DNA of 64,000 nucleotides. Origin: Macrostomum hystrix. Its lineage: Eukaryota > Animalia > Platyhelminthes. Shown in pieces: positions 192 to 63,215 of this stretch. Within the stretch, counting starts at the first letter, position 1, and every line of letters starts with the position of its first letter. Both the position numbers and the translations under genes were made by a program. Below the pieces are notes generated by a model. That model made no database searches and was not told the origin of the DNA. It saw only the letters and a list, made by a program, of their open reading frames with translations. The stretch is from the NCBI GenBank assembly GCA_950097015.1, contig CATNEN010000041.1:310001-374000 (forward strand), read 5' to 3'.

Positions 192-1580
192 ATGGCGCTG
201 TTCCAAGATCCGGGCTCCGGGCGACCGTTGGATGGCATCAAATTCGAAATCGACAGCGACAGCGCCAGCGACGAGGACGACGATGTCCCGACGCCATGCC
301 AGACGCCGACTGGCGAAGAGGCAGCAGCTGAACGTCGGCGAGGCCTTCTTAGCCGCATCGCCTTCCTGGAGGCCGAGGCAGAGAAGCTCATGGAGCACAG
401 CCGCGGCTGCCTTGGCCACGCCGCCGAGATGCAGTCTCTGCTGGCCAGGCTGGACGACCAGAAGGCCGCCCTGCAGCGACTGCTCGGCACCGAGAACGCT
501 GGTCCAGAGCTCGATCCCTGGGACGAGCCGTGCGATTTGACGGAGCACACGGCGCGCACCTACCTGCTGTGGCTGCGGCGACTTTTGCATGATCTGTCCC
601 AGGCGGTGGACCAGTCCGCCAGCGGCAGCGCCACCGCCGCCCCATCCTCCTCCGGCGGGTCGCGGCTGAGCGGCCGGCGTCGTCGAGACGCGCCCAATCG
701 AATTTTTCCGAACCTCGAGGCGCTTGACATCGCTGCCGTCGCGAACGACGCTGGCGACGTGTTTTACCGGCCCAGTGAGGAGGGCGACCTAAGAGACTTC
801 GCACCGGTCGAGCCCGGCTGGGAGCCGCTGCCACGCCAGACTCTGTACTGCGTGGTCGGCGACGGCCGTCAGGTAGCCGTCGTCGCGCTCGGCGGCGAGA
901 TTCTGGCGCGGGCGCGACTGACGGGCGGAAGCGAAGCGGACCAGGCGGCCGATAAGGACGCCGGCGTTGGACGCAACCTGGAACGCATTAACTACCTCCG
1001 CTGCTCTGGGCGCCTGCTGTTCTCGGACTACCAGAGCCTCTACATCTGCGACCGCTGCTGCCGCGTAATGCGCAGCCTTCACGGCTTCAGCTGGATGGTC
1101 GGGCACTGCATCGACGAGCCAGCTGACCGGCTGTATATTGTCGACCGCGTCAACGAGTTTGTCTCCGTGTACGGCCTGGCCAGCCTGGAAGAGCGCGGCC
1201 GCCTCGCCCACCGGGACTTTACCGACGGCATCAGCTCGGTGTGCACCCTGGCGCAGACTCTGTTCGTCTCCGACCGCGGTGCCAACGCCATCTTTGCGTT
1301 CAGTGTGGACTCACTCGAACTGGCCTTCCGGGTGCCGCTGCGCAACCCGCTGTTCGTCACTACGGACTGGTCCGCCTGCCTGTACGTGACCGTGGGCGGC
1401 AGGGACAACACCGTCCGGATCCTTGACACTCAGGGTCAGCTGCGCCGGTCACTCTCCGGCGGTCGCGGCTCGCAGCCTGGACAGTTCGGCTCGCCAGGTG
1501 GCCTCACCGTCTCCCTGGACGGCGCCGAGCTATTCGTGTGCGACCTGGACAACCGGCGCGTCCAGGTGTTTCGCCTGTGA
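192..1580 (+). CDS. Coiled-coil + NHL-repeat (beta-propeller) protein, TRIM-NHL-like but without RING/B-box; intronless
   Basis: 462-aa ORF with Kozak context ACCATGG and GC3-rich codons. Heptad-like helix (LLSRIAFLEAEAEKL...LDDQKAALQRLL) followed by NHL-type blades, ending in a textbook NHL repeat GSQPGQFGSPGGLTVSLDGAELFVCDLDNRRVQVF. Confidence 0.8.
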   Translation: MALFQDPGSGRPLDGIKFEIDSDSASDEDDDVPTPCQTPTGEEAAAERRRGLLSRIAFLEAEAEKLMEHSRGCLGHAAEMQSLLARLDDQKAALQRLLGTENAGPELDPWDEPCDLTEHTARTYLLWLRRLLHDLSQAVDQSASGSATAAPSSSGGSRLSGRRRRDAPNRIFPNLEALDIAAVANDAGDVFYRPSEEGDLRDFAPVEPGWEPLPRQTLYCVVGDGRQVAVVALGGEILARARLTGGSEADQAADKDAGVGRNLERINYLRCSGRLLFSDYQSLYICDRCCRVMRSLHGFSWMVGHCIDEPADRLYIVDRVNEFVSVYGLASLEERGRLAHRDFTDGISSVCTLAQTLFVSDRGANAIFAFSVDSLELAFRVPLRNPLFVTTDWSACLYVTVGGRDNTVRILDTQGQLRRSLSGGRGSQPGQFGSPGGLTVSLDGAELFVCDLDNRRVQVFRL

Positions 1581-7050: not shown

Positions 7051-7671
7051 TAATTTGAGATCAAGTGAGCTATGCATATTCACGAAAACGAAGGAAACAA
7101 AAGCATGTTTTCGCTGCAAAAGTTGGTTTATTTGATGTAAGGAAAAGTAGAGGGAGGGCTCTTTAGACAATTTCAAAGCCTAAATGAACTCCAGTGTTTT
7201 TCTTCAGAAGTGCTTAGCGAAAAGTGGTCTGCATCAGAGTGCACTTTGGGAAGGCAGGTTTTGGCCTAGTAGAGATTAGGAACCCAGAACACGATAAAAG
7301 CCAGCAGAAATAGCTAGTACTCACAGAGATTTGCATCGTCAAGTTTGCGCAATGAATAGAGATTGCAAGTGAAGTCAAAGCCACTGTGCTTCAAATACAG
7401 GGAGCGGGATTCGAGAAATGTGGCAAGGAGCGAGCGATAAATGACACAAATATCCCTTGTTGGGATTAAGGACAGGCGTAACAGGTGCGAATGTGAGTGA
7501 AGATTCAGCTTGCAGACTTCTGATCCGCAAAACTTTGACAATGGCGGCCGGCGACTGTGCTTTTATAGTAGGTAAAATGTGATCCACAAGAGTATCTTTC
7601 ATCCCAGCTGCCAGTGATTCCATCAGCCCCAGCTTAACATTGGCACCCGGCCTGCGGCATCGCCAAGCTGC

Positions 7672-13095
<5,424 letters not shown>

Positions 13096-40400: not shown

Positions 40401-43400
40401 CGAGGCAGGAAATGGACGTGGCTGATCCAAATGAATTATGCAGGCAGGGTGGGCAGCCGTGCACAGCGGCAAAGGGAAACAGAGACTTGGCTGTCCAGGC
40501 TCCAGCCCCTGGCCTGGAAGCCCAAGACACAGAAAACTGGTCTAGGCCAGTTCAATAGCAGAGGGGGGAGGCCAGGTAGCTCTCTAGGAAACCAGTTCTG
40601 TTCCCCGATCGGCCTGGCTTAACAAAGAGAGCACAGCACAGCACAGCGTGACGACTTGTTGCGACCTGATTGAAATTCGGCTAGCCAAGAGACCGAAAGT
40701 AAGCAGTGTCACATTTACCCAACACTAAAATTTATGCAGTGTTTTCTATAGGCAAGAAATTTTCCGCTTCCACTCCGCCGGATACATGCACGACAGCTGC
40801 GCCTTCGAGTTTGGCTAAGACTACTAACCATATTGGCAAGCCTCAACTCGGTACAGCTAAATTAAAAACACTTCAACCCTTTGAGGCTTGTCCCGCACTC
40901 TAGACTGGCGCCAAATGATTAACTCGACTCTGGGAGTGGAAGCAATCACAGCTTTTATCTGTTTCGTGTGTCTGCCAAAGGCCCCGGCCCCCGAAGTATG
41001 TCGAAAGCAACAGTGGAAGGACTAGCAGCCAATCTGGGATCCTGGGTAGGGAACTCATGAGCGTCAGAAACTCACCCTCAACAGCGTTGGTTGAGAAGAA
41101 AGCCAGGTTCTTGGTCTCGAGTGGGTTCTGGTTGGTGTACTCGGGAGTGCGCGACTGCGGCTCGGACTCGCCAGTCAGACAGGAGTTGTCCACCTTAAAG
41201 CCGTGCGACGTGATGATGCGAATGTCGGCAGGGATTCGGTCGCCCATCCGGACTTCGACAATGTCGCCGATCACAAGCTCCTCGGAGGGCACGTTGAGCT
41301 TCTGGCTGCCGCGGATGACCATGGCGTGCTGCGGCACCATCTTCTTGAAGCTCTCCATGATCTTGGCGGACTTGGCCTCTTGATAGTAGGAGAAGATGCC
41401 AGTCACCACCACCACGAAGGTGAGCACAATGCCCAAGTAAAGGTTGTCACCAGGTGGGTTCTCGTAGGCTCCGGTCTGCACAGTGAATGAGCAGTTAATA
41501 AGAAGGCTTTAAGTGTGTGGCAAAAGTACAAAATGAAAGGCACAAAATTCAGGACCAAGCCTATGGGGCAGTGACAAATCCTTGAAGGACCAAGTATGAG
41601 GTATGGTTAGCACTGCAGCAATGAAGCACAACTAGCCTGAATGCCGTAGGCCACAAAGCAGAGGATGGCTCCAATCCACAGCAGCAGGGAGAAGCCGCCA
41701 AACAGTGTCTTGCAGAACTTCACCCACTCTGGCGTTGTCTTGGGCGGTGTCAGCTCATTGCGGCCATACTTGATCAGCCTCTGAGCCGCATCTGCCACAG
41801 TGAGGCCGGAGGTGGGGTTGGTCTCCAGGCGACTATACAGCTCTTGGATGTCAACAGAATGCTCGTCCATGTCCAGCTCCTGCTTCAGGTCCTCAAGCTT
41901 GGCCTTACCGGCCTTCTTCTTGTCCGCCTTGCTCATCTAAGAAGTGAGTAATGTTGTTTTGTGTAGGTGGATTGCATATAGAATGACTTACTTGATATAG
42001 GTCTCTATATTTTACATATATAGCAGCTATTTTTACTAATATAATATATGACTTAGAATCAGAATGAACATTTTAGTATAGATAAATTGATATTAAATGT
42101 ACAGCTATACAATAAATATACAATTTATATTTTACTTTTTATCACAGCTCAAAGAAATTCATTGGAGTTTAAAAGAAGTGTTTTAATGTAAATTAATCTA
42201 CAACTTATTGCTAAGATACATTTAGTTACTCACAATAGAAGCACAAATTAATACGAGGGTTGTCCGGCCAAAAATAGGACTGCTCAAATATTACTTCAGC
42301 TATGTGAGATATGAATCTGAAAATCGATAATAATATTTTTCAATGTCTATGGACATAACTCCTCAAAAAACTACAGCAGCGCATTTATGGTTACTTGACA
42401 CTGCTTAAGGCAAGCTTTTGCCTATCGCACACCCCTACGACATTTCCTAGCACTTATCTTACCACTTACGATGGTTAAACAGCGCGAAATCGTTGTTGAC
42501 TGCTTCAAGGCCGGGAGATCGGCCAAGGAGTGCATGCAGCACCTGCAGGCCATCTACGGCAGCGAAGCCTTGTCGCGGAGCCAAGTGTATTACATATTTG
42601 AACAGCTTCGTGAAGGTCACGATGGCTCTGTTGGCAGAGGTAACCATCGTGATCCAACTGTTAGGACGCCAGCGAATGTGGCGATGGTTGAGGAGCTGGT
42701 CAGCGACGACAGGCGTCTCACTGTCAGGGAACTGTCCGACTTGACTGGCATATCGAAGACAACTGTTGACGAGATTCTGACCAAGGATCTGCAGCTCAAG
42801 CATGTGTCAGCAAGATGGGTGCCGCACCTTCTGACTGAGGAGAACCGAGCTGAGCGAGTTCGCTGCGCCAAGAACTTCTATCGCCTGATGCGCAGCAATC
42901 CCGGCTTCCTTGATCGAGTCATCACTGCTGATGAGACATGGCTGCACTATGTGACCCCAGAGACCAAGGTTCAGTCGAAGCAGTGGGTTCCGCGTGCAGC
43001 TGCGGCCCCAACAAAAGCGCGGGTGTCGCGCAGTGCCAAGAAGACCATGGCCATTGTGTTCTTCGACTCGAGCGGGCTGGTGTACACGCATTATGTGCCA
43101 AATGGACTGACGGTCAACAGCCAGTACTACTGTGAGGTCCTGGACACTCTGCAAGATCATATCAGCCGCAAGAGGCCGCAGCTGGCGCGAAGAGGCTGGT
43201 TCCTCCATCATGACAATGCCCGCCCCCACGTGTCAGCGTTGACCCAGCAGTTCCTGGAGAGGCGAGGCATTCAGACTGTGCCACATCCGCCGTACTCCCC
43301 GGACTTGGCCCCATGCAACTTTTGGCTATTTCCTAAAGTCAAAGCCGCGATCGCTGGCGCCCGTTTTGACTCCCTACAGGAGGTCAAGAATGCTTGGGAG

Positions 43401-44791
43401 GGGGTCACGACCCCTATGCCTGCGTCTAGCTTCGCTTAGGCCTTCGACAAGTGGCTGGTGAGGTGGGAGCGGTGTCTGGAGAAAGGTGGCAACTTTGTTG
43501 AGAAGTGACTCAAGTTTCGTTTTGTTTGCATGCATTGTTGCTGAGTTATTAAAGCAGTCCTATTTTTGGCCGGACAACCCTCGTATTTGTCATTTTCTTT
43601 CTTTTCTAAATCACATTTCTTTCTTATTAAAAAAAACTGGTAGTTAGTACAATCTATATTATACTGTGACAAATACATTTTAGTCAACATATGCATATTT
43701 GATGCATACATTTAAATAAATGAAAATTATAAGATTGCAAAGTTTTAGGACAAAAATCTCATGTCTAATAATTAGTAGCAAAATTGTAAATAAACAAATT
43801 TTACTGTTGTTTACACAACTAATAAGCAAATATATAACAGTGTTTTTTTTCAATAATGTTAGAGTCATTATACAATTAGAGACATTTTTGTATAATTTTG
43901 ATAAAACATTATTACCTAAATTTGCTGTGCAAATGACAAAAATACAAAGTCTAGCTACTTATTTATCACATAAATAATTTCCTAATAATGAAGATGACTA
44001 TCAATATGGCAATAATTTTTATTTTAGTCTCTGATTTGACTAAGGGACCCTATTCACATATTTGCTGAAACTATTCACTAAAAAACTAGCAGTAAAAATT
44101 ACAATGGCTAGGCTTTTTTGCATTTTTAATTATTGTATTTATGAAATATAATATTTAAAGGCTACAAAAATAGACTAATTAAAAACCCATAAAGCATGCT
44201 AAGGAAAGTGTTTATTTTAATCAAGACAACATTTCGAGAGCACTCAGTAAATACAAAAAAATAATAAGTATCCCTAATTTATTTTTATGTCAATTAAGTA
44301 GGTTAAAGTTGGTAGTAATACCTTAATATCCTTAAATAGATTTACTGACTCCTCTGACAATGAGAAACATAGACAATAGACATTCATCTTAATAATACAT
44401 CCATTATAGCTATATATAGCCCCAACTAGCATTTATTGACGATAAAATTTGCACTAATTTATGATTTGAGTGTACATATGAGTGAACATATACTGATGAT
44501 AAATAAAGCAAATGTATATCCATTTTTATTTCAAGGTTTATAGAATAAGATACAAAAACAAAGCAGTCCATTCACTACAGCATAGTAATGCAATCGCAGA
44601 TAAAAAAGCGCAAGCAACAAACAAAGAAAGAAATTAGGAAAGACCTGCAATTATTTTCCTAATGATGTTCTATGTTCAGAACTGAGTCTGAGGAACAGTT
44701 AATGTTTAAAATGCAGAATATTAAATTGTAATTTTATAAAATATTTATTTTATACATCATAAATGCTATTTTTACTTACTTGGTCAGCCAT
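34409..44791 (-). CDS. ATP1A: Na+/K+-transporting ATPase alpha subunit (P2C), complete, 1009 aa
   Basis: Seven exons: 44780-44791, 41637-41936, 41076-41475, 37334-37714, 36212-36909, 35200-36081, 34409-34765 (3030 nt, in frame). Motifs: [58 protein letters not shown]-terminal ETYY. Confidence 0.96.
34826..35145. repeat. 29-bp minisatellite (GATCTGGGAAACTGACTGCTCAGCATGGA) in ATPase intron 6
   Basis: Period 29 (34861 to 34890). Confidence 0.95.
37765..37935. repeat. 22-bp minisatellite (GGGGTAATGACCGATTGATAAC) next to the acceptor of ATPase exon 4
   Basis: Direct inspection. Confidence 0.88.
42254..43583 (+). mobile_element. Full-length mariner (Tc1/mariner DD34D family) DNA transposon, TA target duplication
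   Basis: Perfect 31-bp TIRs CGAGGGTTGTCCGGCCAAAAATAGGACTGCT (42254-42284 / 43553-43583) flanked by TA at 42252-53 and 43584-85; 1330 bp; antisense within ATPase intron 1. Confidence 0.96.
42471..43508 (+). pseudogene. Mariner transposase with premature stop and D-to-N at the third catalytic residue
   Basis: [24 protein letters not shown] and [10 protein letters not shown] (normally CDF). TAG at 43437-43439 interrupts a frame that continues [22 protein letters not shown] to TGA at 43506-43508. Confidence 0.9.
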
Positions 44792-58000: not shown

Positions 58001-58905
58001 TAGCCTTGGAGAATCAGTTTGTCATGTCAATGAAGGTCCAAATCAAAGACAGGTTTTGTGCCAATCTGTTTGAGCCTACTAGTACCATTGTTGATAATGA
58101 ATTGACAGTTGACAGTTGTCAGTTGACAAAGCTGACAGGCTGCTAGCTGAAGCTCCAAGCTTGCCCAACCCAAGAAATTTGGAGCAGATAGGCTGATACT
58201 ATGAATATTGATAATATTATACTATGAATTTCGTTTTCTATTGTCAAATGTCTACTATTTTGAATCAAATTTTGAATTTTACTTACTAAGTATATGATAT
58301 ATATAATAGTAGTACCAAACTACTTTTTATGAAATTTCCTAATAAATCAACCTCTCTTTATGCTGAGGATGTTGGCCTAAATATGGCAATGCCTGAATAA
58401 GCTTTATTACATAAAATTGTTTTAAGATTTTGGAAGTTGTCATTTTTGTATTAGATAGTCCTATGAAAAGTGTTTTAATTTTTAATTTTAGCATATTTCT
58501 GTATCATTTATGTCAGGCTAGATTTGGTAATATATTATTACTGACTGACATGTAGCTTTCGATTTCAAGACTATCAAGATTTCTATATATATACTTGAAA
58601 TCATATACCCTAGATACTCACAATAGTTCTAGCTAACTGTTAAGTCTAATGTATGTCATGTATGTTTTTTACTAATTGACTGTGAAACGTAAAAGTATCT
58701 TTTTTGCAGCATAAACCTAAAAGCATACCTAAGTTATTAAACTTTCTCAATTAACACAATCTATTTACAAGAGTATCATGCCTTCAGTATCACAGCTTTA
58801 TGAATAGTCCTATTTAGTAGACCTTAAGTATTAGGTAAGCAGTAGTACTTAATTCTAAATCATGTAAATTTAACGATTTCGTTCTCACAACTTCAGCACT
58901 GAACG

Positions 58906-60168
58906 ATGGATCGAGTGCCGATCGACGCGTCCGAGATCCTGATCCTGGCCTGCCCCCAGTGCCAGTTCATGACGCTGAAGGTAGCATCATTGGACGCCCA
59001 CCTGAAGGAGCACGACTGCAAGATCCAGGTGAAGCTGAACAAGTGCAAGCAGTGCGGCATGATCACCAACTCCGAGAAGGTGATTGAGGAACACGTCCAG
59101 ATCTGGCACCCGAGCAAGGACGTGAAGGAGAATGTGACTGTTGTGTTCGACGAGACGTACAACCAGGACAAGCCCGCTCCGACCGCCAAGGCGGCGCCAA
59201 CAGCTGGCGGCGATGTTCAGAGGACGCAGCAGGCACCGAGGTCGAGTGTGGCTGGACTGCCGCAGATAAACCTGCTGCAGCTGATGTACATGGCCCACGG
59301 ACCGGTGGAGATCAACCTGCCCGGCATGTACCAGTTGGATCGTACGAAGAACGGCGTGCACGCTGCGATCTCGTTCATGCCGAGCTTCTTGAACAAGACT
59401 GTCGCAGAAATGTTCATGGATTCTCTGAAGCAGGACCTTTCGTGGAAGCAGCTGACCTCCACTACGAAGGACGGCAAAGAGCGTCAGGAGCCTCGTCTGA
59501 CATGCTACATCGGGCCAGACTTTGAGTACAGTGGCAACAAGTTTGAGAACTGCAACGAGTGGAACCCGAAGCTGAAGGAGCTGAAGGAGCTCGTGGAGAA
59601 GGCGGTTGGTCGCGAGTTCAACGCAGTAATTTGCTACATGTACCGCAACGGCAGGGACAGCCTTGGCTGGCATTCTGAGACTGAGAAGCCTCTGGGTGAT
59701 CACCCTTACATCGCTGCAGTGACCCTCGGTCAGGCCAGGTACGTGGAGTTCTTGAGGAAGGGCCGCGACGATCGCTACGTGAGGTTGCGCTCTGCCCACG
59801 GTGACCTGGTGATCACGGAGGGCGCCATCGAGGAGCTGTGGGTTCATCGCATCCCCAAGGACCCCATGGCTCGTCGCACGAGCTACACCTTCTCGTTCCG
59901 CAACATCAACCCGGTGAAGAAAAAAGCCGAGCCCAACAAGCCCTCCGCAGCCCCCGCCGCTGCTGCCGCCGCCGCCCCCACCGCTGAGGCAGTCGCCAAG
60001 CCCGCAGCTGACACACCCGCCGAGAAACCAAGCGAGGCTCCTGCCTTGAAGGCAGAGCCGGCCGCCGCCGACGACGCCGCCGCCACCCCGGCCGCCGCGG
60101 CCGCCCCGGCTGGTAAGAAGGGCAAGAGTCCCGGCCCGGTGGGCAGCGGCAAGGGAAAGAAGAAGTGA
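58906..60168 (+). CDS. ALKBH3-like: Two C2H2 zinc fingers + ALKBH3/ALKBH2-like 2OG-Fe(II) dioxygenase domain + Ala/Pro/Lys-rich tail (copy 1, 420 aa)
   Basis: CPQC-x12-HLKEH and CKQC-x12-HVQIWH; EPRLTCYIG, FNAVICYMYRNGRDSLGWHSETE, WVHRIPK, terminal FSFR align collinearly with ALKBH3. GC3-rich, uninterrupted ORF. Confidence 0.88.
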   Translation: MDRVPIDASEILILACPQCQFMTLKVASLDAHLKEHDCKIQVKLNKCKQCGMITNSEKVIEEHVQIWHPSKDVKENVTVVFDETYNQDKPAPTAKAAPTAGGDVQRTQQAPRSSVAGLPQINLLQLMYMAHGPVEINLPGMYQLDRTKNGVHAAISFMPSFLNKTVAEMFMDSLKQDLSWKQLTSTTKDGKERQEPRLTCYIGPDFEYSGNKFENCNEWNPKLKELKELVEKAVGREFNAVICYMYRNGRDSLGWHSETEKPLGDHPYIAAVTLGQARYVEFLRKGRDDRYVRLRSAHGDLVITEGAIEELWVHRIPKDPMARRTSYTFSFRNINPVKKKAEPNKPSAAPAAAAAAAPTAEAVAKPAADTPAEKPSEAPALKAEPAAADDAAATPAAAAAPAGKKGKSPGPVGSGKGKKK

Positions 60169-61239
60169 GGCCTCGGGCGTCGAGTTTCGTAGGCGCCGAG
60201 TGTGTCCGCCACCCACTCTGTGTGTTCGCTGCAACTTTGCAGCTGTTGCTGTTTTAAAAAGTGAAATTTTTGTTGAACAAAGACGCGAATAAATCCTCAA
60301 AATTATTAAATATTCAAAGCAATCTTTGTTTTTCTCTTTATACGCTTTTCTACTAGTAGCCCCATTTTTCGATCCGAGTTTATTTATTGTTTACCCACTC
60401 ATAGCCGCATTAGCTAGGTCACACACATTTTGTTGTCTGGCTAGTCAAAAGTGCAGGACTGTTCTCTCGCCACCTATGCGTCGCTGCTGCTACTCCAACG
60501 TACTTCTCTGCGCTAAATAAGAAAACCATATAGTCTCGTTCTGTGTTAGGTATAATACCGCTGCCAGTAGCCCGTGCTCTGGTCTCCAGCTCGGATAGCT
60601 AGTCCCCTAGCGCCCGTGTTGTTCGCTTGGACAGTAATAAATATATTCATAAGTGTAGCACAATAGCAATCCACAGTATAGATGCTTGACCGCATACTGG
60701 GTCAGGCTCCACCTAGCACCCCACTGCGACGGTTTCCTGTTATCACTAAAGTAAACGACTACTAAAGCGCAGTGGCGGTCGCATGTTCTCGGTCGTACGC
60801 GAGTCTGTTTCCCCACATTGTTCTCTAAAACTGATCTGCTGAAGCGTAACCCGGCTTGTGTGAGATCAGCGATGGCACCCTACAGGTTGTCCAGCGCCTA
60901 TCTTTAATCCCTCTTTATCGCGTTGGCAGAATTTTATGGACACGTTGCCTAAAAGCAGTTGGATACAAGCAATAATAAATTCTAACAGTCCTGGTTTATA
61001 TTACGATTTTTCCCTTTTTTCATTTAATTTTGTTTTCTAAAAATGTCAGTAACATAGCCTTCAGTCTTATAAAACTCAGGAATTTAGGTGAATAAAAAAA
61101 GGTTTTTCACGACTAGAGATAGACAGCCGGCTTTTGATGAACTGATGCGGACTTTGCCATCAAAAACGTAAAAATGAATCCCTTTTGCACGAAAATAGTT
61201 TTGTTTTCCGACCGATAATTTTTTCAGAGCAAACAAGAC

Positions 61240-62301
61240 ATGAATCGAGTGCCGATCGACGCGTCCGAGATCCTGATCCTGGCCTGCCCCCAGTGCCAGT
61301 TCATGACGCTGAAGGTAGCATCATTGGACGCCCACCTGAAGGAGCACGACTGCAAGATCCAGGTGAAGCTGAACAAGTGCAAGCAGTGCGGCATGATCAC
61401 CAACTCCGAGAAGGTGATTGAGGAACACGTCCAGATCTGGCACCCGAGCAAGGACGTGAAGGAGAATGTGACTGTTGTGTTCGACGAGACGTACAACCAG
61501 GACAAGCCCGCTCCGACCGCCAAGGCGGCGCCAACAGCTGGCGGCGATGTTCAGAGGACGCAGCAGGCACCGAGGTCGAGTGTGGCTGGACTGCCGCAGA
61601 TAAACCTGCTGCAGCTGATGTACATGGCCCACGGACCGGTGGAGATCAACCTGCCCGGCATGTACCAGTTGGATCGTACGAAGAACGGCGTGCACGCTGC
61701 GATCTCGTTCATGCCGAGCTTCTTGAACAAGACTGTCGCAGAAATGTTCATGGATTCTCTGAAGCAGAACCTTTCGTGGAAGCAGCTGACCTCCACTACG
61801 AAGGACGGCAAAGAGCGTCAGGAGCCTCGTCTGACATGCTACATCGGGCCAGACTTTGAGTACAGTGGCAACAAGTTTGAGAACTGCAACGAGTGGAACC
61901 CGAAGCTGAAGGAGCTGAAGGAGCTCGTGGAGAAGGCGGTTGGTCGCGAGTTCAACGCAGTAATTTGCTACATGTACCGCAACGGCAGGGACAGCCTTGG
62001 CTGGCATTCTGAGACTGAGAAGCCTCTGGGTGATCACCCTTACATCGCTGCAGTGACCCTCGGTCAGGCCAGGTACGTGGAGTTCTTGAGGAAGGGCCGC
62101 GACGATCGCTACGTGAGGTTGCGCTCTGCCCACGGTGACCTGGTGATCACGGAGGGCGCCATCGAGGAGCTGTGGGTTCATCGCATCCCCAAGGACCCCA
62201 TGGCTCGTCGCACGAGCTACACCTTCTCGTTCCGCAACATCAACCCGGTGAAGAAGGAGGAGGCCTCGAAGGGCGCAGCCGGCAGCGGAGATTCCGCTTG
62301 A
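61240..62301 (+). CDS. ALKBH3-like: Two C2H2 zinc fingers + ALKBH3-like dioxygenase domain (copy 2, 353 aa, short tail)
   Basis: Matches copy 1 at offset 2334 from codon 2 to 62255, with differences seen only at 61243 and 61768; different C-terminus. Confidence 0.88.
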   Translation: MNRVPIDASEILILACPQCQFMTLKVASLDAHLKEHDCKIQVKLNKCKQCGMITNSEKVIEEHVQIWHPSKDVKENVTVVFDETYNQDKPAPTAKAAPTAGGDVQRTQQAPRSSVAGLPQINLLQLMYMAHGPVEINLPGMYQLDRTKNGVHAAISFMPSFLNKTVAEMFMDSLKQNLSWKQLTSTTKDGKERQEPRLTCYIGPDFEYSGNKFENCNEWNPKLKELKELVEKAVGREFNAVICYMYRNGRDSLGWHSETEKPLGDHPYIAAVTLGQARYVEFLRKGRDDRYVRLRSAHGDLVITEGAIEELWVHRIPKDPMARRTSYTFSFRNINPVKKEEASKGAAGSGDSA

Positions 62302-63215
62302 AAGCTTGAGCCAGCTTTCCGTTCAGGAACTGAGAGATCTGAGATTGGATTTTTACTAGTTTTTTCCGTTTCGCATATTCCTGCGTTTTTCTAATCCGGT
62401 TATGTTATCCTTCCCCTGCTTCATCGCTGCCTTCCCCTTCGTGTCGGGATTGACTTTGTCCGATTGCTAAGCGCAAGCGGCTTGTGCTCAGAAAATTTAG
62501 CTTTCGCTGCGCATTTTTCGTCAGAATTCTAGCGCCGTAGCTTCAGTTTCACCGGCGTTCAGATCTGCGCTTTGCTATATCGAGTTGGCTAAAGAACATC
62601 TTTTTGAACTCGAATAAACTCGAACTTGAACAGCGTTGTTTCACTTTTGTTACCGATGTTTTCTGTTACTTTTCACAAAAAAATAATATACTTTTTGGAA
62701 TTAATCAAATGTTTGTCACTGAATTGCTCATTTTTTAATTATTTGCTTCAACCACAGGACAATTCAGTTTCATACCAACTGCATGTAAAATGCCAATGAA
62801 AAGTCGGCAGGCTGCGTCAGTAAGCGCAGAAATATTTCCCTGTCTGCACTGTTAATACTTCTACTAGACACTAGACGCCTTCCCAGTGCATGTCGTACCC
62901 TTTATGAGGTAGGGTGTGGTGGGGCGTACAGTCCTGCACTGACAGTAGTCTTTTTTTAAATATCTTTCTGCGCTCTGTTTTTCGGGCTGTTCTGGAGCAG
63001 TTAGAAACTTTGAGTGCTCATTGCAGGCTCTAGCATCGCTCATTGCTCGCTTTAACCATTGTCTCTGACTTATCAGCTGCCGCTGCCTTCGCTTACGATG
63101 ACCCCATAGCGAGGGGCAGGGAGTGTCGCTTCGCGAGCGCGGATTTATACTAAAAAATTAGAAAGAGCTCTGCTCAGGGGCAGTCCTTTCAGAATTATTT
63201 AGCGTTGCTTTTGCG

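What the first reader, a model, noticed from the sequence alone, without database searches (positions are those of the whole stretch)
58906..62301. C2H2-zinc-finger/AlkB fusion with rewired cofactor site: candidate sequence-targeted modified-base reader or atypical eraser
Seen: both ORFs carry two canonical C2H2 fingers directly N-terminal to an ALKBH3-like fold. Known: canonical ALKBH1-8/FTO lack C2H2 fingers; human ALKBH3 binds Fe via H191/D193/H257 and 2OG via N179, Y181, R269, N271, R275. Aligned by eye without gaps: HSD becomes HSE, the NLY Asn becomes Tyr (CYMY), and RVNLTFR becomes SYTFSFR (first Arg and Asn lost), while both His and the last Arg are kept. Inference: a nucleic-acid-targeted AlkB that uses a different cosubstrate geometry or binds alkylated/methylated bases without turnover. 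I do not know of a described family with this architecture.
Basis: partly seen in the sequence, partly recalled or inferred. Interest (0 to 1): 0.78.

Follow-up and report, generated by a model that had tools for sequence, protein, structure and literature searches.

The report
Zinc-finger AlkB enzyme with altered cofactor pocket
A Macrostomum flatworm expresses two tandem genes for an ALKBH3-type nucleic-acid demethylase fused to two zinc fingers; selection has kept its iron site, but the residues that normally hold the 2-oxoglutarate cofactor are replaced, so it is either an unusual enzyme or a non-catalytic binder.

Summary
There are two intronless + strand genes, 58906-60168 (420 aa) and 61240-62301 (353 aa). 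Each encodes two C2H2 fingers, a roughly 55-aa disordered linker and an ALKBH3-type fold (PDB ALKBH3 E 1.5e-33; AlphaFold/Foldseek TM 0.90-0.95).

An ungapped mapping shows these changes:
- HxD becomes HxE (E258).
- The 2OG C5-carboxylate Arg becomes Ser326.
- Asn271 becomes Thr328.
- Asn179 becomes Tyr244.
- Both His, Tyr246 and the distal Arg332 are kept.

Among the 90 nearest homologues the canonical residues hold in 83-89.

Both genes are made into spliced-leader trans-spliced mRNAs. Against the syntenic M. lignano locus, dN/dS is about 0.12 for the AlkB domain and 0.09 for the fingers.

The finger-AlkB architecture is not unique to this protein. A small clade shares it with canonical HxD/RxNxTxR sites: one M. 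lignano paralogue with automatic UniProt names, and two unidentified ENA contigs. The rewiring is therefore a derived change on the Macrostomum branch.

My best reading (about 0.5) is a still-active Fe(II) oxygenase whose 2OG site was rebuilt, possibly using Arg324. A non-catalytic reader is the main rival. Sequence-specific targeting is untested. The scan also noted this stretch (s1-286261) and similar loci on other pieces (s1-270687, s1-342721).

The parts
58895..58896 (+). Spliced-leader trans-splice acceptor AG of gene 1
   Evidence: RNA-derived contigs of runs X1 and X3 carry the last 24 nt of the Macrostomum SL joined here (SL sequence in PMC8629364; genome sequence). The SL's ATG reads ATG CAC TGA, a 2-codon uORF, so the ORF's own ATG at 58906 is used.
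58906..60168 (+). Gene 1 CDS, 420 aa: two C2H2 fingers, linker, ALKBH3-like domain, long Ala/Pro/Lys tail
   Evidence: ORF. A colinear contig spans 58910-60594 without gaps, so there is no intron.
58951..59109 (+). Gene 1 finger pair (aa 16-36 and 47-68)
   Evidence: Predicted beta-beta-alpha topology, at low confidence.
59293..59919 (+). Gene 1 AlkB/ALKBH3-type double-stranded beta-helix domain (aa 130-338)
59635..59901 (+). Cofactor-site codons of gene 1. Y244 at 59635-7, Y246, H256 at 59671-3, E258 at 59677-9, H314 at 59845-7, R324 at 59875-7, S326 at 59881-3, T328 at 59887-9, S330, R332 at 59899-901. The same residues in gene 2 lie 2334 nt further on.
   Evidence: Residue positions; mapping; column counts.
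59929..60165 (+). Gene 1 specific tail (aa 342-420), ending in a basic Gly/Lys-rich motif
   Evidence: The last 20 aa are identical to the long-tail gene of M. lignano locus L001, with 3 synonymous differences. A role as a nuclear-localisation signal or nucleic-acid tether is inferred only.
60974..60979 (+). AATAAA signal of gene 1; transcript contigs end at 60993-60995
61226..61227 (+). Spliced-leader acceptor AG of gene 2
   Evidence: SL-joined contigs in X1, X2 and X5; sequence. Here the SL's ATG is in frame with no stop, and would add MSKQD before Met1.
61240..62301 (+). Gene 2 CDS, 353 aa: same fingers (61285-61443) and AlkB domain (61627-62253), short acidic tail
   Evidence: Contigs cover 61227-62255 and 62226-62564.
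58906..59928 (+). Gene-conversion tract, partner 61240-62262. The two copies are nearly identical from the start codon to about aa 341; the flanks and tails are unrelated.
   Evidence: The same pattern occurs independently in M. lignano locus L001.

Best explanation
The two genes are host genes of a Macrostomum flatworm. They belong to a small clade of ALKBH3-derived proteins that gained N-terminal C2H2 fingers once. In the Macrostomum branch the 2-oxoglutarate pocket was rebuilt in steps. First, Asn179 was lost at the base of the clade. Second, an Arg was gained two residues upstream of the canonical C5-binding Arg; this state is seen in the intron-bearing relative L003, which carries both. 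Third, on the long stem of this subfamily, D->E in the iron triad, R->S, N->T, T->S and I->Y occurred. I think the product is most likely still an Fe(II)-dependent oxygenase acting on modified bases in single-stranded DNA or RNA. Iron would be held by H256/E258/H314 and oxygen activation would use R332. The distal carboxylate of 2OG would be held by Y246, a hydroxyl-lined strand (S326/T328/S330) and possibly the relocated R324. The finger pair would tether the enzyme to nucleic acid or to a partner. The two paralogues differ only in their tails (basic versus short acidic), perhaps for different compartments. Shown: anatomy, fold, residue mapping, derived state, transcription, trans-splicing, purifying selection, concerted evolution. 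Inferred: catalysis, the role of R324, the substrate, and the roles of the fingers and tails.
For: Fold and family. Residue mapping and rarity: D193-equivalent is D in 89/90, R269-equivalent is R in 83/90 and Y181-equivalent is Y in 90/90 nearest homologues. Of 50 columns that are at least 80% conserved, 32 are kept in all target-type sequences, including both His, Tyr246, Arg332, R197, E260 and R278. Purifying selection: dN/dS is 0.12 (AlkB) and 0.09 (fingers) at dS about 0.65 against syntenic locus L001, Fisher p 5e-21. H-x-E...H, R324, S326 and R332 are also kept in the more diverged L004 copy, whereas a degenerate AlkB-like domain in that same ORF has lost the first His. Dead domains in this genus therefore do decay. 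Glu is an accepted carboxylate ligand in the general His-X-Asp/Glu-Xn-His motif (PMC10816986). Residue roles are taken from PMC3985658. R at position -8 coexists with the canonical R at -6 in L003 and is invariant in all five target-type sequences. The tree places the target clade inside the finger-AlkB clade with canonical sites (SH-aLRT 88/96/96/100; stem length 0.65). Transcripts: SL-joined contigs for both genes in two studies, with no coverage of the flanks.
Against: The Arg on strand beta-VIII is described as required for 2OG binding in nucleic-acid oxygenases (PMC3985658), and it is absent here together with both Asn residues. I know of no active AlkB-family member without it. AlphaFold places R324 in the loop before the strand, and I had no coordinates, so its reach to the 2OG site is unmeasured. 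Eighteen of 50 conserved columns changed, including Q309E at a column that is 100% Gln, so the lineage is generally fast-evolving. Purifying selection is equally compatible with a conserved binding function. No activity data exist.
Confidence: 0.5

Rival explanations
1. Pseudoenzyme or reader. The fold is kept as a metal-stabilised pocket that binds flipped alkylated or methylated bases, or single-stranded nucleic acid, without turnover. The fingers and tail provide localisation.
For: The substrate-side Asp194 equivalent is Thr or Lys and varies between loci. The genus already has canonical ALKBH3-like paralogues that could carry the repair load, as well as a clearly dead AlkB-like domain in L004.
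Against: The full H-x-E...H triad, Tyr246 and the oxygen-activating Arg332 are retained under dN/dS of about 0.12 and across saturated dS in L004. A pure binder has no obvious need for these, and the truly degenerate domain next door lost them.
Confidence: 0.25
2. Active oxygenase or oxidase that uses a different co-substrate (a 2-oxo acid without the distal carboxylate, or none), made possible by a less basic, hydroxyl- and Tyr-lined pocket.
For: One positive charge is lost and Tyr244 is gained in the pocket, while the metal and O2-activation residues are kept.
Against: No precedent in the AlkB family that I know of. Tyr246, which pairs with the Arg at the C5-carboxylate, is kept. R324 offers a simpler route to normal 2OG use.
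Confidence: 0.12
3. Ordinary ALKBH3 repair demethylase, in which the apparent substitutions are alignment artefacts and the 2OG ligands are supplied normally.
For: Very close fold match to ALKBH3.
Against: The mapping is ungapped and fixed by identical spacings (Tyr to His1 = 10; His2 to last Arg = 18) in HMMER, MAFFT and the predicted strand 326-332. RNA contigs confirm the codons.
Confidence: 0.03
4. A transposon-derived or decaying gene pair, for example related to the LINE ORF1-AlkB fusions noted elsewhere in this genome.
For: Both genes are intronless, sit in tandem and have a GC-rich CDS in AT-rich flanks. Earlier scan notes report LINE ORF1-AlkB fusions in the same genome (not checked here).
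Against: The locus is syntenic with its downstream gene in M. lignano. The mRNAs are SL trans-spliced. There is an intron-bearing relative (L003). Purifying selection is strong. No RT or transposase lies next to it.
Confidence: 0.03

Closest known systems
Human ALKBH3 (PDB 2IUW, 8JNK, 8JNR, 9NCZ)
   Same: Same double-stranded beta-helix fold (TMt 0.90-0.95, about 33% identity). Both His, Tyr181, Arg275, Arg131, Tyr143 and Glu195 equivalents are kept.
   Different: It has N-terminal C2H2 fingers and a linker. Asp193 -> Glu, Arg269 -> Ser, Asn271 -> Thr, Asn179 -> Tyr, Asp194 -> Thr/Lys, Gln252 -> Glu.
M. lignano Mlig015948-type proteins (P0007; UniProt A0A267FMZ1 and others) and ENA contigs L002 and L003
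   Same: Same architecture (two or three C2H2 fingers plus an ALKBH3-like domain) and a single clade in the tree. All lack Asn179 (Ile or Thr).
   Different: They keep HSD and R-x-N-x-T-F-R. The target subfamily sits on a long derived branch carrying the E/S/T/Y set.
JmjC and other 2OG oxygenases with an H-x-E...H triad
   Same: A Glu carboxylate ligand is compatible with catalysis (general motif in PMC10816986).
   Different: A different superfamily branch. Those enzymes bind the 2OG C5-carboxylate with a Lys from strand beta-IV (PMC3985658). No equivalent has been identified here.
ALKBH8 (RRM + AlkB + methyltransferase; PDB 3THP)
   Same: A precedent for a nucleic-acid-binding module fused N-terminal to an AlkB domain (one search lists 3THP).
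   Different: It has an RRM rather than C2H2 fingers, a canonical cofactor site and a different AlkB subfamily.
BCL11A fingers 5-6 and CTCF fingers
   Same: Closest solved relatives of the finger pair (E 5e-10 and 4.5e-8). This includes a longer-than-usual inter-finger linker, as in BCL11A.
   Different: No TGEKP linker. The helix positions that usually read bases are small or mixed (K/A/S/A and S/K/V/E, read from the sequence), so DNA sequence specificity is not implied.

Membership tests
AlkB / ALKBH3-like 2OG-Fe(II) dioxygenases (PF13532) | Sequence match above the curated threshold | tested here: met
   51.5-52.1 bits against a cut-off of 31.2. ALKBH3 chains at E 1.5e-33.
AlkB / ALKBH3-like 2OG-Fe(II) dioxygenases (PF13532) | Double-stranded beta-helix fold with an ALKBH3-type nucleotide-recognition lid | tested here: met
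   AlphaFold pLDDT 93-98. Foldseek TMt 0.90-0.95 to ALKBH3 and 0.76-0.86 to ALKBH2.
AlkB / ALKBH3-like 2OG-Fe(II) dioxygenases (PF13532) | H-x-D...H iron triad | tested here: not met
   The triad is H256-S-E258...H314. Asp occupies this column in 89/90 nearest homologues. The broader H-x-D/E...H motif is met.
AlkB / ALKBH3-like 2OG-Fe(II) dioxygenases (PF13532) | Arg on strand beta-VIII binding the 2OG C5-carboxylate (first Arg of RxNxTxR) | tested here: not met
   Ser326 here; Arg in 83/90 homologues. Role from PMC3985658.
AlkB / ALKBH3-like 2OG-Fe(II) dioxygenases (PF13532) | Asn binding the 2OG C1-carboxylate (Asn179 of ALKBH3) | tested here: not met
   Tyr244 here; Asn in 84/90. It is Ile or Thr in the other finger-AlkB proteins.
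AlkB / ALKBH3-like 2OG-Fe(II) dioxygenases (PF13532) | Tyr at the C5-carboxylate and the distal Arg next to iron | tested here: met
   Y246 (90/90) and R332 (86/90) are kept.
AlkB / ALKBH3-like 2OG-Fe(II) dioxygenases (PF13532) | 2OG-dependent oxidative demethylation activity | not testable with these tools
   Needs biochemistry.
Classical C2H2 zinc fingers | C-x2-C-x12-H-x3-5-H ligand pattern, conserved among relatives | tested here: met
   Two fingers; all 8 ligands are invariant in 6 clade sequences.
Classical C2H2 zinc fingers | Significant similarity to known C2H2 fingers | tested here: met
   The clade profile matches BCL11A at E 5e-10 and CTCF at 4.5e-8. A single sequence is below the Pfam cut-offs.
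Classical C2H2 zinc fingers | Sequence-specific DNA binding | not testable with these tools
   No TGEKP linker and few typical base-contact residues. Needs SELEX, EMSA or CLIP.

The most novel reading that the evidence does not exclude
A naturally evolved AlkB-fold protein that has given up canonical 2-oxoglutarate binding but keeps its iron centre. It would either use another co-substrate or act as a zinc-finger-tethered, metal-dependent reader of methylated or alkylated bases. It is maintained as a gene-converted pair whose members differ only in localisation tails.
Probability: 0.3. Interest if true: 0.8.

Novelty: new variant of a known kind. Interest (0 to 1): 0.55.

Why it matters
AlkB-family enzymes (DNA/RNA repair and m6A/m1A erasers) are defined by an invariant HxD...H plus RxNxTxR cofactor site. 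This is an expressed, selected member in which that site was rebuilt stepwise, with the intermediate states still visible in relatives. It offers a natural test of how much of the 2OG site is dispensable or movable, and a possible first pseudo-AlkB reader. The host genus is a transgenic, RNAi-tractable regeneration model that retains DNMT1/3 and ALKB2 (PMC9246332), so function can be tested directly. The finger fusion also suggests recruited rather than diffusive base repair or demethylation.

Tried and rejected
- Word-based protein searches with the single protein and with a clade profile found only M. lignano relatives. An exact look-up of the window protein found nothing.
- The protein-atlas feature search gave only generic 2OG-oxygenase clusters at 0.83-0.85, which is not informative.
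- Paper searches for the finger-AlkB architecture, Macrostomum AlkB, AlkB pseudoenzymes and flatworm ALKBH3 found no description. Wasik 2015 is not held. The 8JNK/8JNR structure paper was not found.
- I could not obtain model coordinates; /data holds FASTA only. The R324-to-2OG distance and the placement of Y244 could therefore not be measured.
- I first thought the changes clustered only at the cofactor site. The count shows 18 of 50 conserved columns changed, many of them conservatively, so I dropped that claim.
- Other homologues lacking the beta-VIII Arg were mostly truncated or mis-spliced gene models, or clearly dead (P0059). They give no precedent.
- The species of the window could not be fixed. 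The nearest public proteins are M. lignano at 84% identity, with dS about 0.65 to the syntenic locus. It is either a congener or an old duplicate locus.
- The organisms behind ENA contigs L002 and L003 remain unidentified.
Full report
**What is there.**
The window holds two + strand ORFs, 58906-60168 (420 aa) and 61240-62301 (353 aa). The only close public relatives are hypothetical proteins of Macrostomum lignano, the best at 84% identity. The species is Macrostomum, either a congener of M. lignano or an old duplicate locus.

The two ORFs are almost identical from the start codon to about residue 341, with two amino-acid differences (D2N and D177N). Their upstream regions, downstream regions and C-terminal tails are unrelated.

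**Domains.**
Pfam finds PF13532 (2OG-FeII_Oxy_2) at 51.5-52.1 bits against a cut-off of 31.2. It finds C2H2 models only below their thresholds.

The fingers have the classical spacing (C16/C19/H32/H36 and C47/C50/H63/H68). All eight ligands are invariant across six sequences of the clade. A profile of that region matches BCL11A fingers 5-6 at E 5e-10 and CTCF fingers at 4.5e-8. They are real C2H2 fingers.

The fingers are not directly adjacent to the catalytic fold. Residues 70-125 form a low-confidence linker.

The catalytic domain matches human ALKBH3 chains at E 1.5e-33 and ALKBH2 at about 4e-9. An AlphaFold model built on 95 sequences has pLDDT 93-98 over residues 140-332. It superposes on ALKBH3 structures with TM 0.90-0.95 (normalised by the target) and rmsd 1.4-2.3 A.

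**The cofactor site.**
The HMMER alignment to ALKBH3 is ungapped around all key motifs, and the spacings are identical in both proteins: Tyr to first His is 10 residues, and second His to last Arg is 18. The predicted strand 326-332 coincides with ALKBH3's 269-275 strand. The mapping is:

| ALKBH3 | This protein |
|---|---|
| N179 | Y244 |
| Y181 | Y246 (kept) |
| H191 | H256 (kept) |
| D193 | E258 |
| D194 | T259 (Lys in the M. lignano copies) |
| H257 | H314 (kept) |
| R269 | S326 |
| N271 | T328 |
| T273 | S330 |
| R275 | R332 (kept) |

According to PMC3985658, in nucleic-acid oxygenases:
- the Arg on strand beta-VIII and the Tyr bind the 2OG C5-carboxylate;
- the Asn binds the C1-carboxylate;
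- the distal Arg sits next to the iron and is thought to act in oxygen activation.

PMC10816986 gives the ALKBH3 triad as H191/D193/H257 within a general His-X-Asp/Glu-Xn-His motif.

Among the 90 nearest homologues, drawn from an exhaustive HMMER search of 1.84 billion representatives (4,427 hits), the canonical residues are nearly fixed: D 89/90, R 83/90, N271 77/90 (Ser in 8), N179 84/90, Y 90/90, distal R 86/90. The few others that lack the Arg are truncated gene models or plainly dead.

**Is the architecture new?**
Not entirely. Only six proteins scored below 1e-30.
- P0007 (M. lignano Mlig015948 type) has the same two fingers and a canonical HSD/RINLTFR site. UniProt names it and its close copies automatically as C2H2-type or Fe2OG dioxygenase domain-containing proteins.
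- Two contigs from ENA assemblies of unknown organisms encode three fingers plus a canonical site. One is L002, whose true ORF starts at base 80 and not at the called Met. The other is L003, which has introns.

A maximum-likelihood tree groups all finger-bearing proteins as (P0007,(L002,(L003, target subfamily))), with SH-aLRT support of 88, 96, 96 and 100. The stem leading to the target subfamily is long, at 0.65. This was the quick method, so it deserves moderate trust.

The finger fusion therefore arose once, with an ordinary active site. The rewiring is a later, derived event on the Macrostomum branch.

The order of changes can be read from the relatives:
1. Asn179 is already Ile or Thr in all finger-AlkB proteins.
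2. L003 has an extra Arg two residues before the canonical Arg (R-C-R-I-N).
3. The target keeps that upstream Arg (R324, invariant in all five target-type sequences) and has lost the canonical one (R-T-S-Y-T).

Residues -8 and -6 of a strand face the same side. This suggests, but does not show, that the 2OG-clamping Arg was relocated rather than simply lost. AlphaFold places R324 in the loop just before the strand. I had no coordinates to measure its reach.

**Is it a living gene?**
Yes. Contigs from four public runs in two studies carry the last 24 nt of the Macrostomum spliced leader joined at 58896 and at 61227. The 35-nt sequence is given in PMC8629364, and its conservation across the genus in PMC10468722. 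The contigs run colinearly through both coding regions and their specific tails. They do not cover the upstream or far downstream flanks. This identifies the runs as RNA and shows two intronless, trans-spliced mRNAs.

Gene 1 transcripts end about 15 nt after an AATAAA at 60974-60979. The leader's own ATG gives a two-codon uORF on gene 1. On gene 2 it is in frame and would add five residues.

**Selection.**
M. lignano contig NIVC01000625.1 (L001) carries a syntenic locus with the same two-gene layout: a 397-aa gene with a long basic tail and a 353-aa gene with a short tail. The same downstream gene follows.

Between the loci, dS is about 0.65. dN/dS is 0.12 for the AlkB domain, 0.09 for the fingers and 0.27 for the linker. 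Fisher's test gives p 5e-21 for the AlkB domain.

All derived residues (Y244, E258, S326, S330), R324 and the retained ligands are identical in L001. They are also identical in a third, more diverged copy inside a chimeric M. lignano gene (L004), except that T328 is Ala there. That same L004 ORF also contains an older AlkB-like domain that has lost the first His. Dead AlkB domains in this genus do lose their metal ligands, and the target has not.

The last 20 residues of the long tail are identical between loci, with three synonymous differences.

**Interpretation.**
The descriptive part is secure. The mechanism is not. I rank the readings as follows.

1. *Retained Fe(II) oxygenase with a rebuilt 2OG pocket (about 0.5).* The whole metal and oxygen-activation apparatus and Tyr246 are conserved under strong constraint. 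Glu is an accepted ligand. A relocated Arg is available.
2. *Non-catalytic reader (about 0.25).* This is the main rival. The canonical carboxylate clamps are gone, the Asp194 equivalent varies, and canonical paralogues exist to do the repair.
3. *A changed co-substrate (about 0.12).*
4. *An ordinary ALKBH3.* The ungapped mapping excludes this.
5. *Transposon origin.* Synteny, trans-splicing and an intron-bearing relative argue against it.

Whether the fingers give sequence-specific targeting is untested. They lack the TGEKP linker, and the usual base-reading helix positions are small or mixed.

**Context and novelty.**
M. lignano keeps DNMT1/3 and ALKB2 (PMC9246332). It has several further ALKBH3-like paralogues. 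Earlier scan notes report LINE ORF1-AlkB fusions in the same genome (not checked here). The genus appears to have an expanded ALKBH3 repertoire.

I found no paper on finger-AlkB fusions or on an AlkB member lacking the beta-VIII Arg. I rate this a new variant of a known kind, of moderate-to-good interest. It is directly testable in a tractable animal.

Noticed in passing
window 58906-59928 vs 61240-62262; L001 4007-5030 vs 7474-8497: Concerted evolution. Within each locus the two cores are nearly identical (dS 0.01-0.02), but they differ by 16% in amino acids between loci. The tails match their counterpart in the other locus rather than their neighbour. The conversion tract starts at the ATG and stops at about aa 341. 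Runs X1-X3 show the same variants (S209C, T273A) in both copies.
   Followed up: partly
L004 5010-9139 (M. lignano NIVC01000499.1): A chimeric gene. One exon encodes two C2H2 fingers, followed by an intron filled with a retroelement (an RNase H-like/LINE-type ORF). A single 543-aa ORF then holds a degenerate AlkB-like domain (first His lost) followed by a target-type AlkB core (HCE, S-Y-A-F-S-F-R).
   Followed up: partly
window 61225-61239 and 58894-58902: The spliced leader's terminal ATG is in frame with gene 2, adding MSKQD. On gene 1 it opens a two-codon uORF (ATG CAC TGA).
   Followed up: partly
L002 80-1390: The public gene call (P0005, 373 aa) starts at an internal Met. The open frame from base 80 gives 436 aa with three C2H2 fingers.
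   Followed up: yes
window 60995-61226: Only about 230 nt separate the 3' end of gene 1 transcripts from the SL acceptor of gene 2. The pair may be transcribed as an operon-like unit.
   Followed up: no
window 42471-43439 (+): A mariner/Mos1-type transposase ORF (Transposase_1 at E 2.5e-19, HTH_48).
   Followed up: no
window 8137-9444 (-) and 192-1580 (+): A Copine-domain ORF (E 3e-33) and an ORF with a weak NHL repeat.
   Followed up: no
window 58987-60300 (-) and 61321-62181 (-): Long antisense ORFs (437 and 286 aa) lie over both genes. They are most likely shadows of the GC-rich codon usage. The SL junctions show that the + strand is the mRNA.
   Followed up: no
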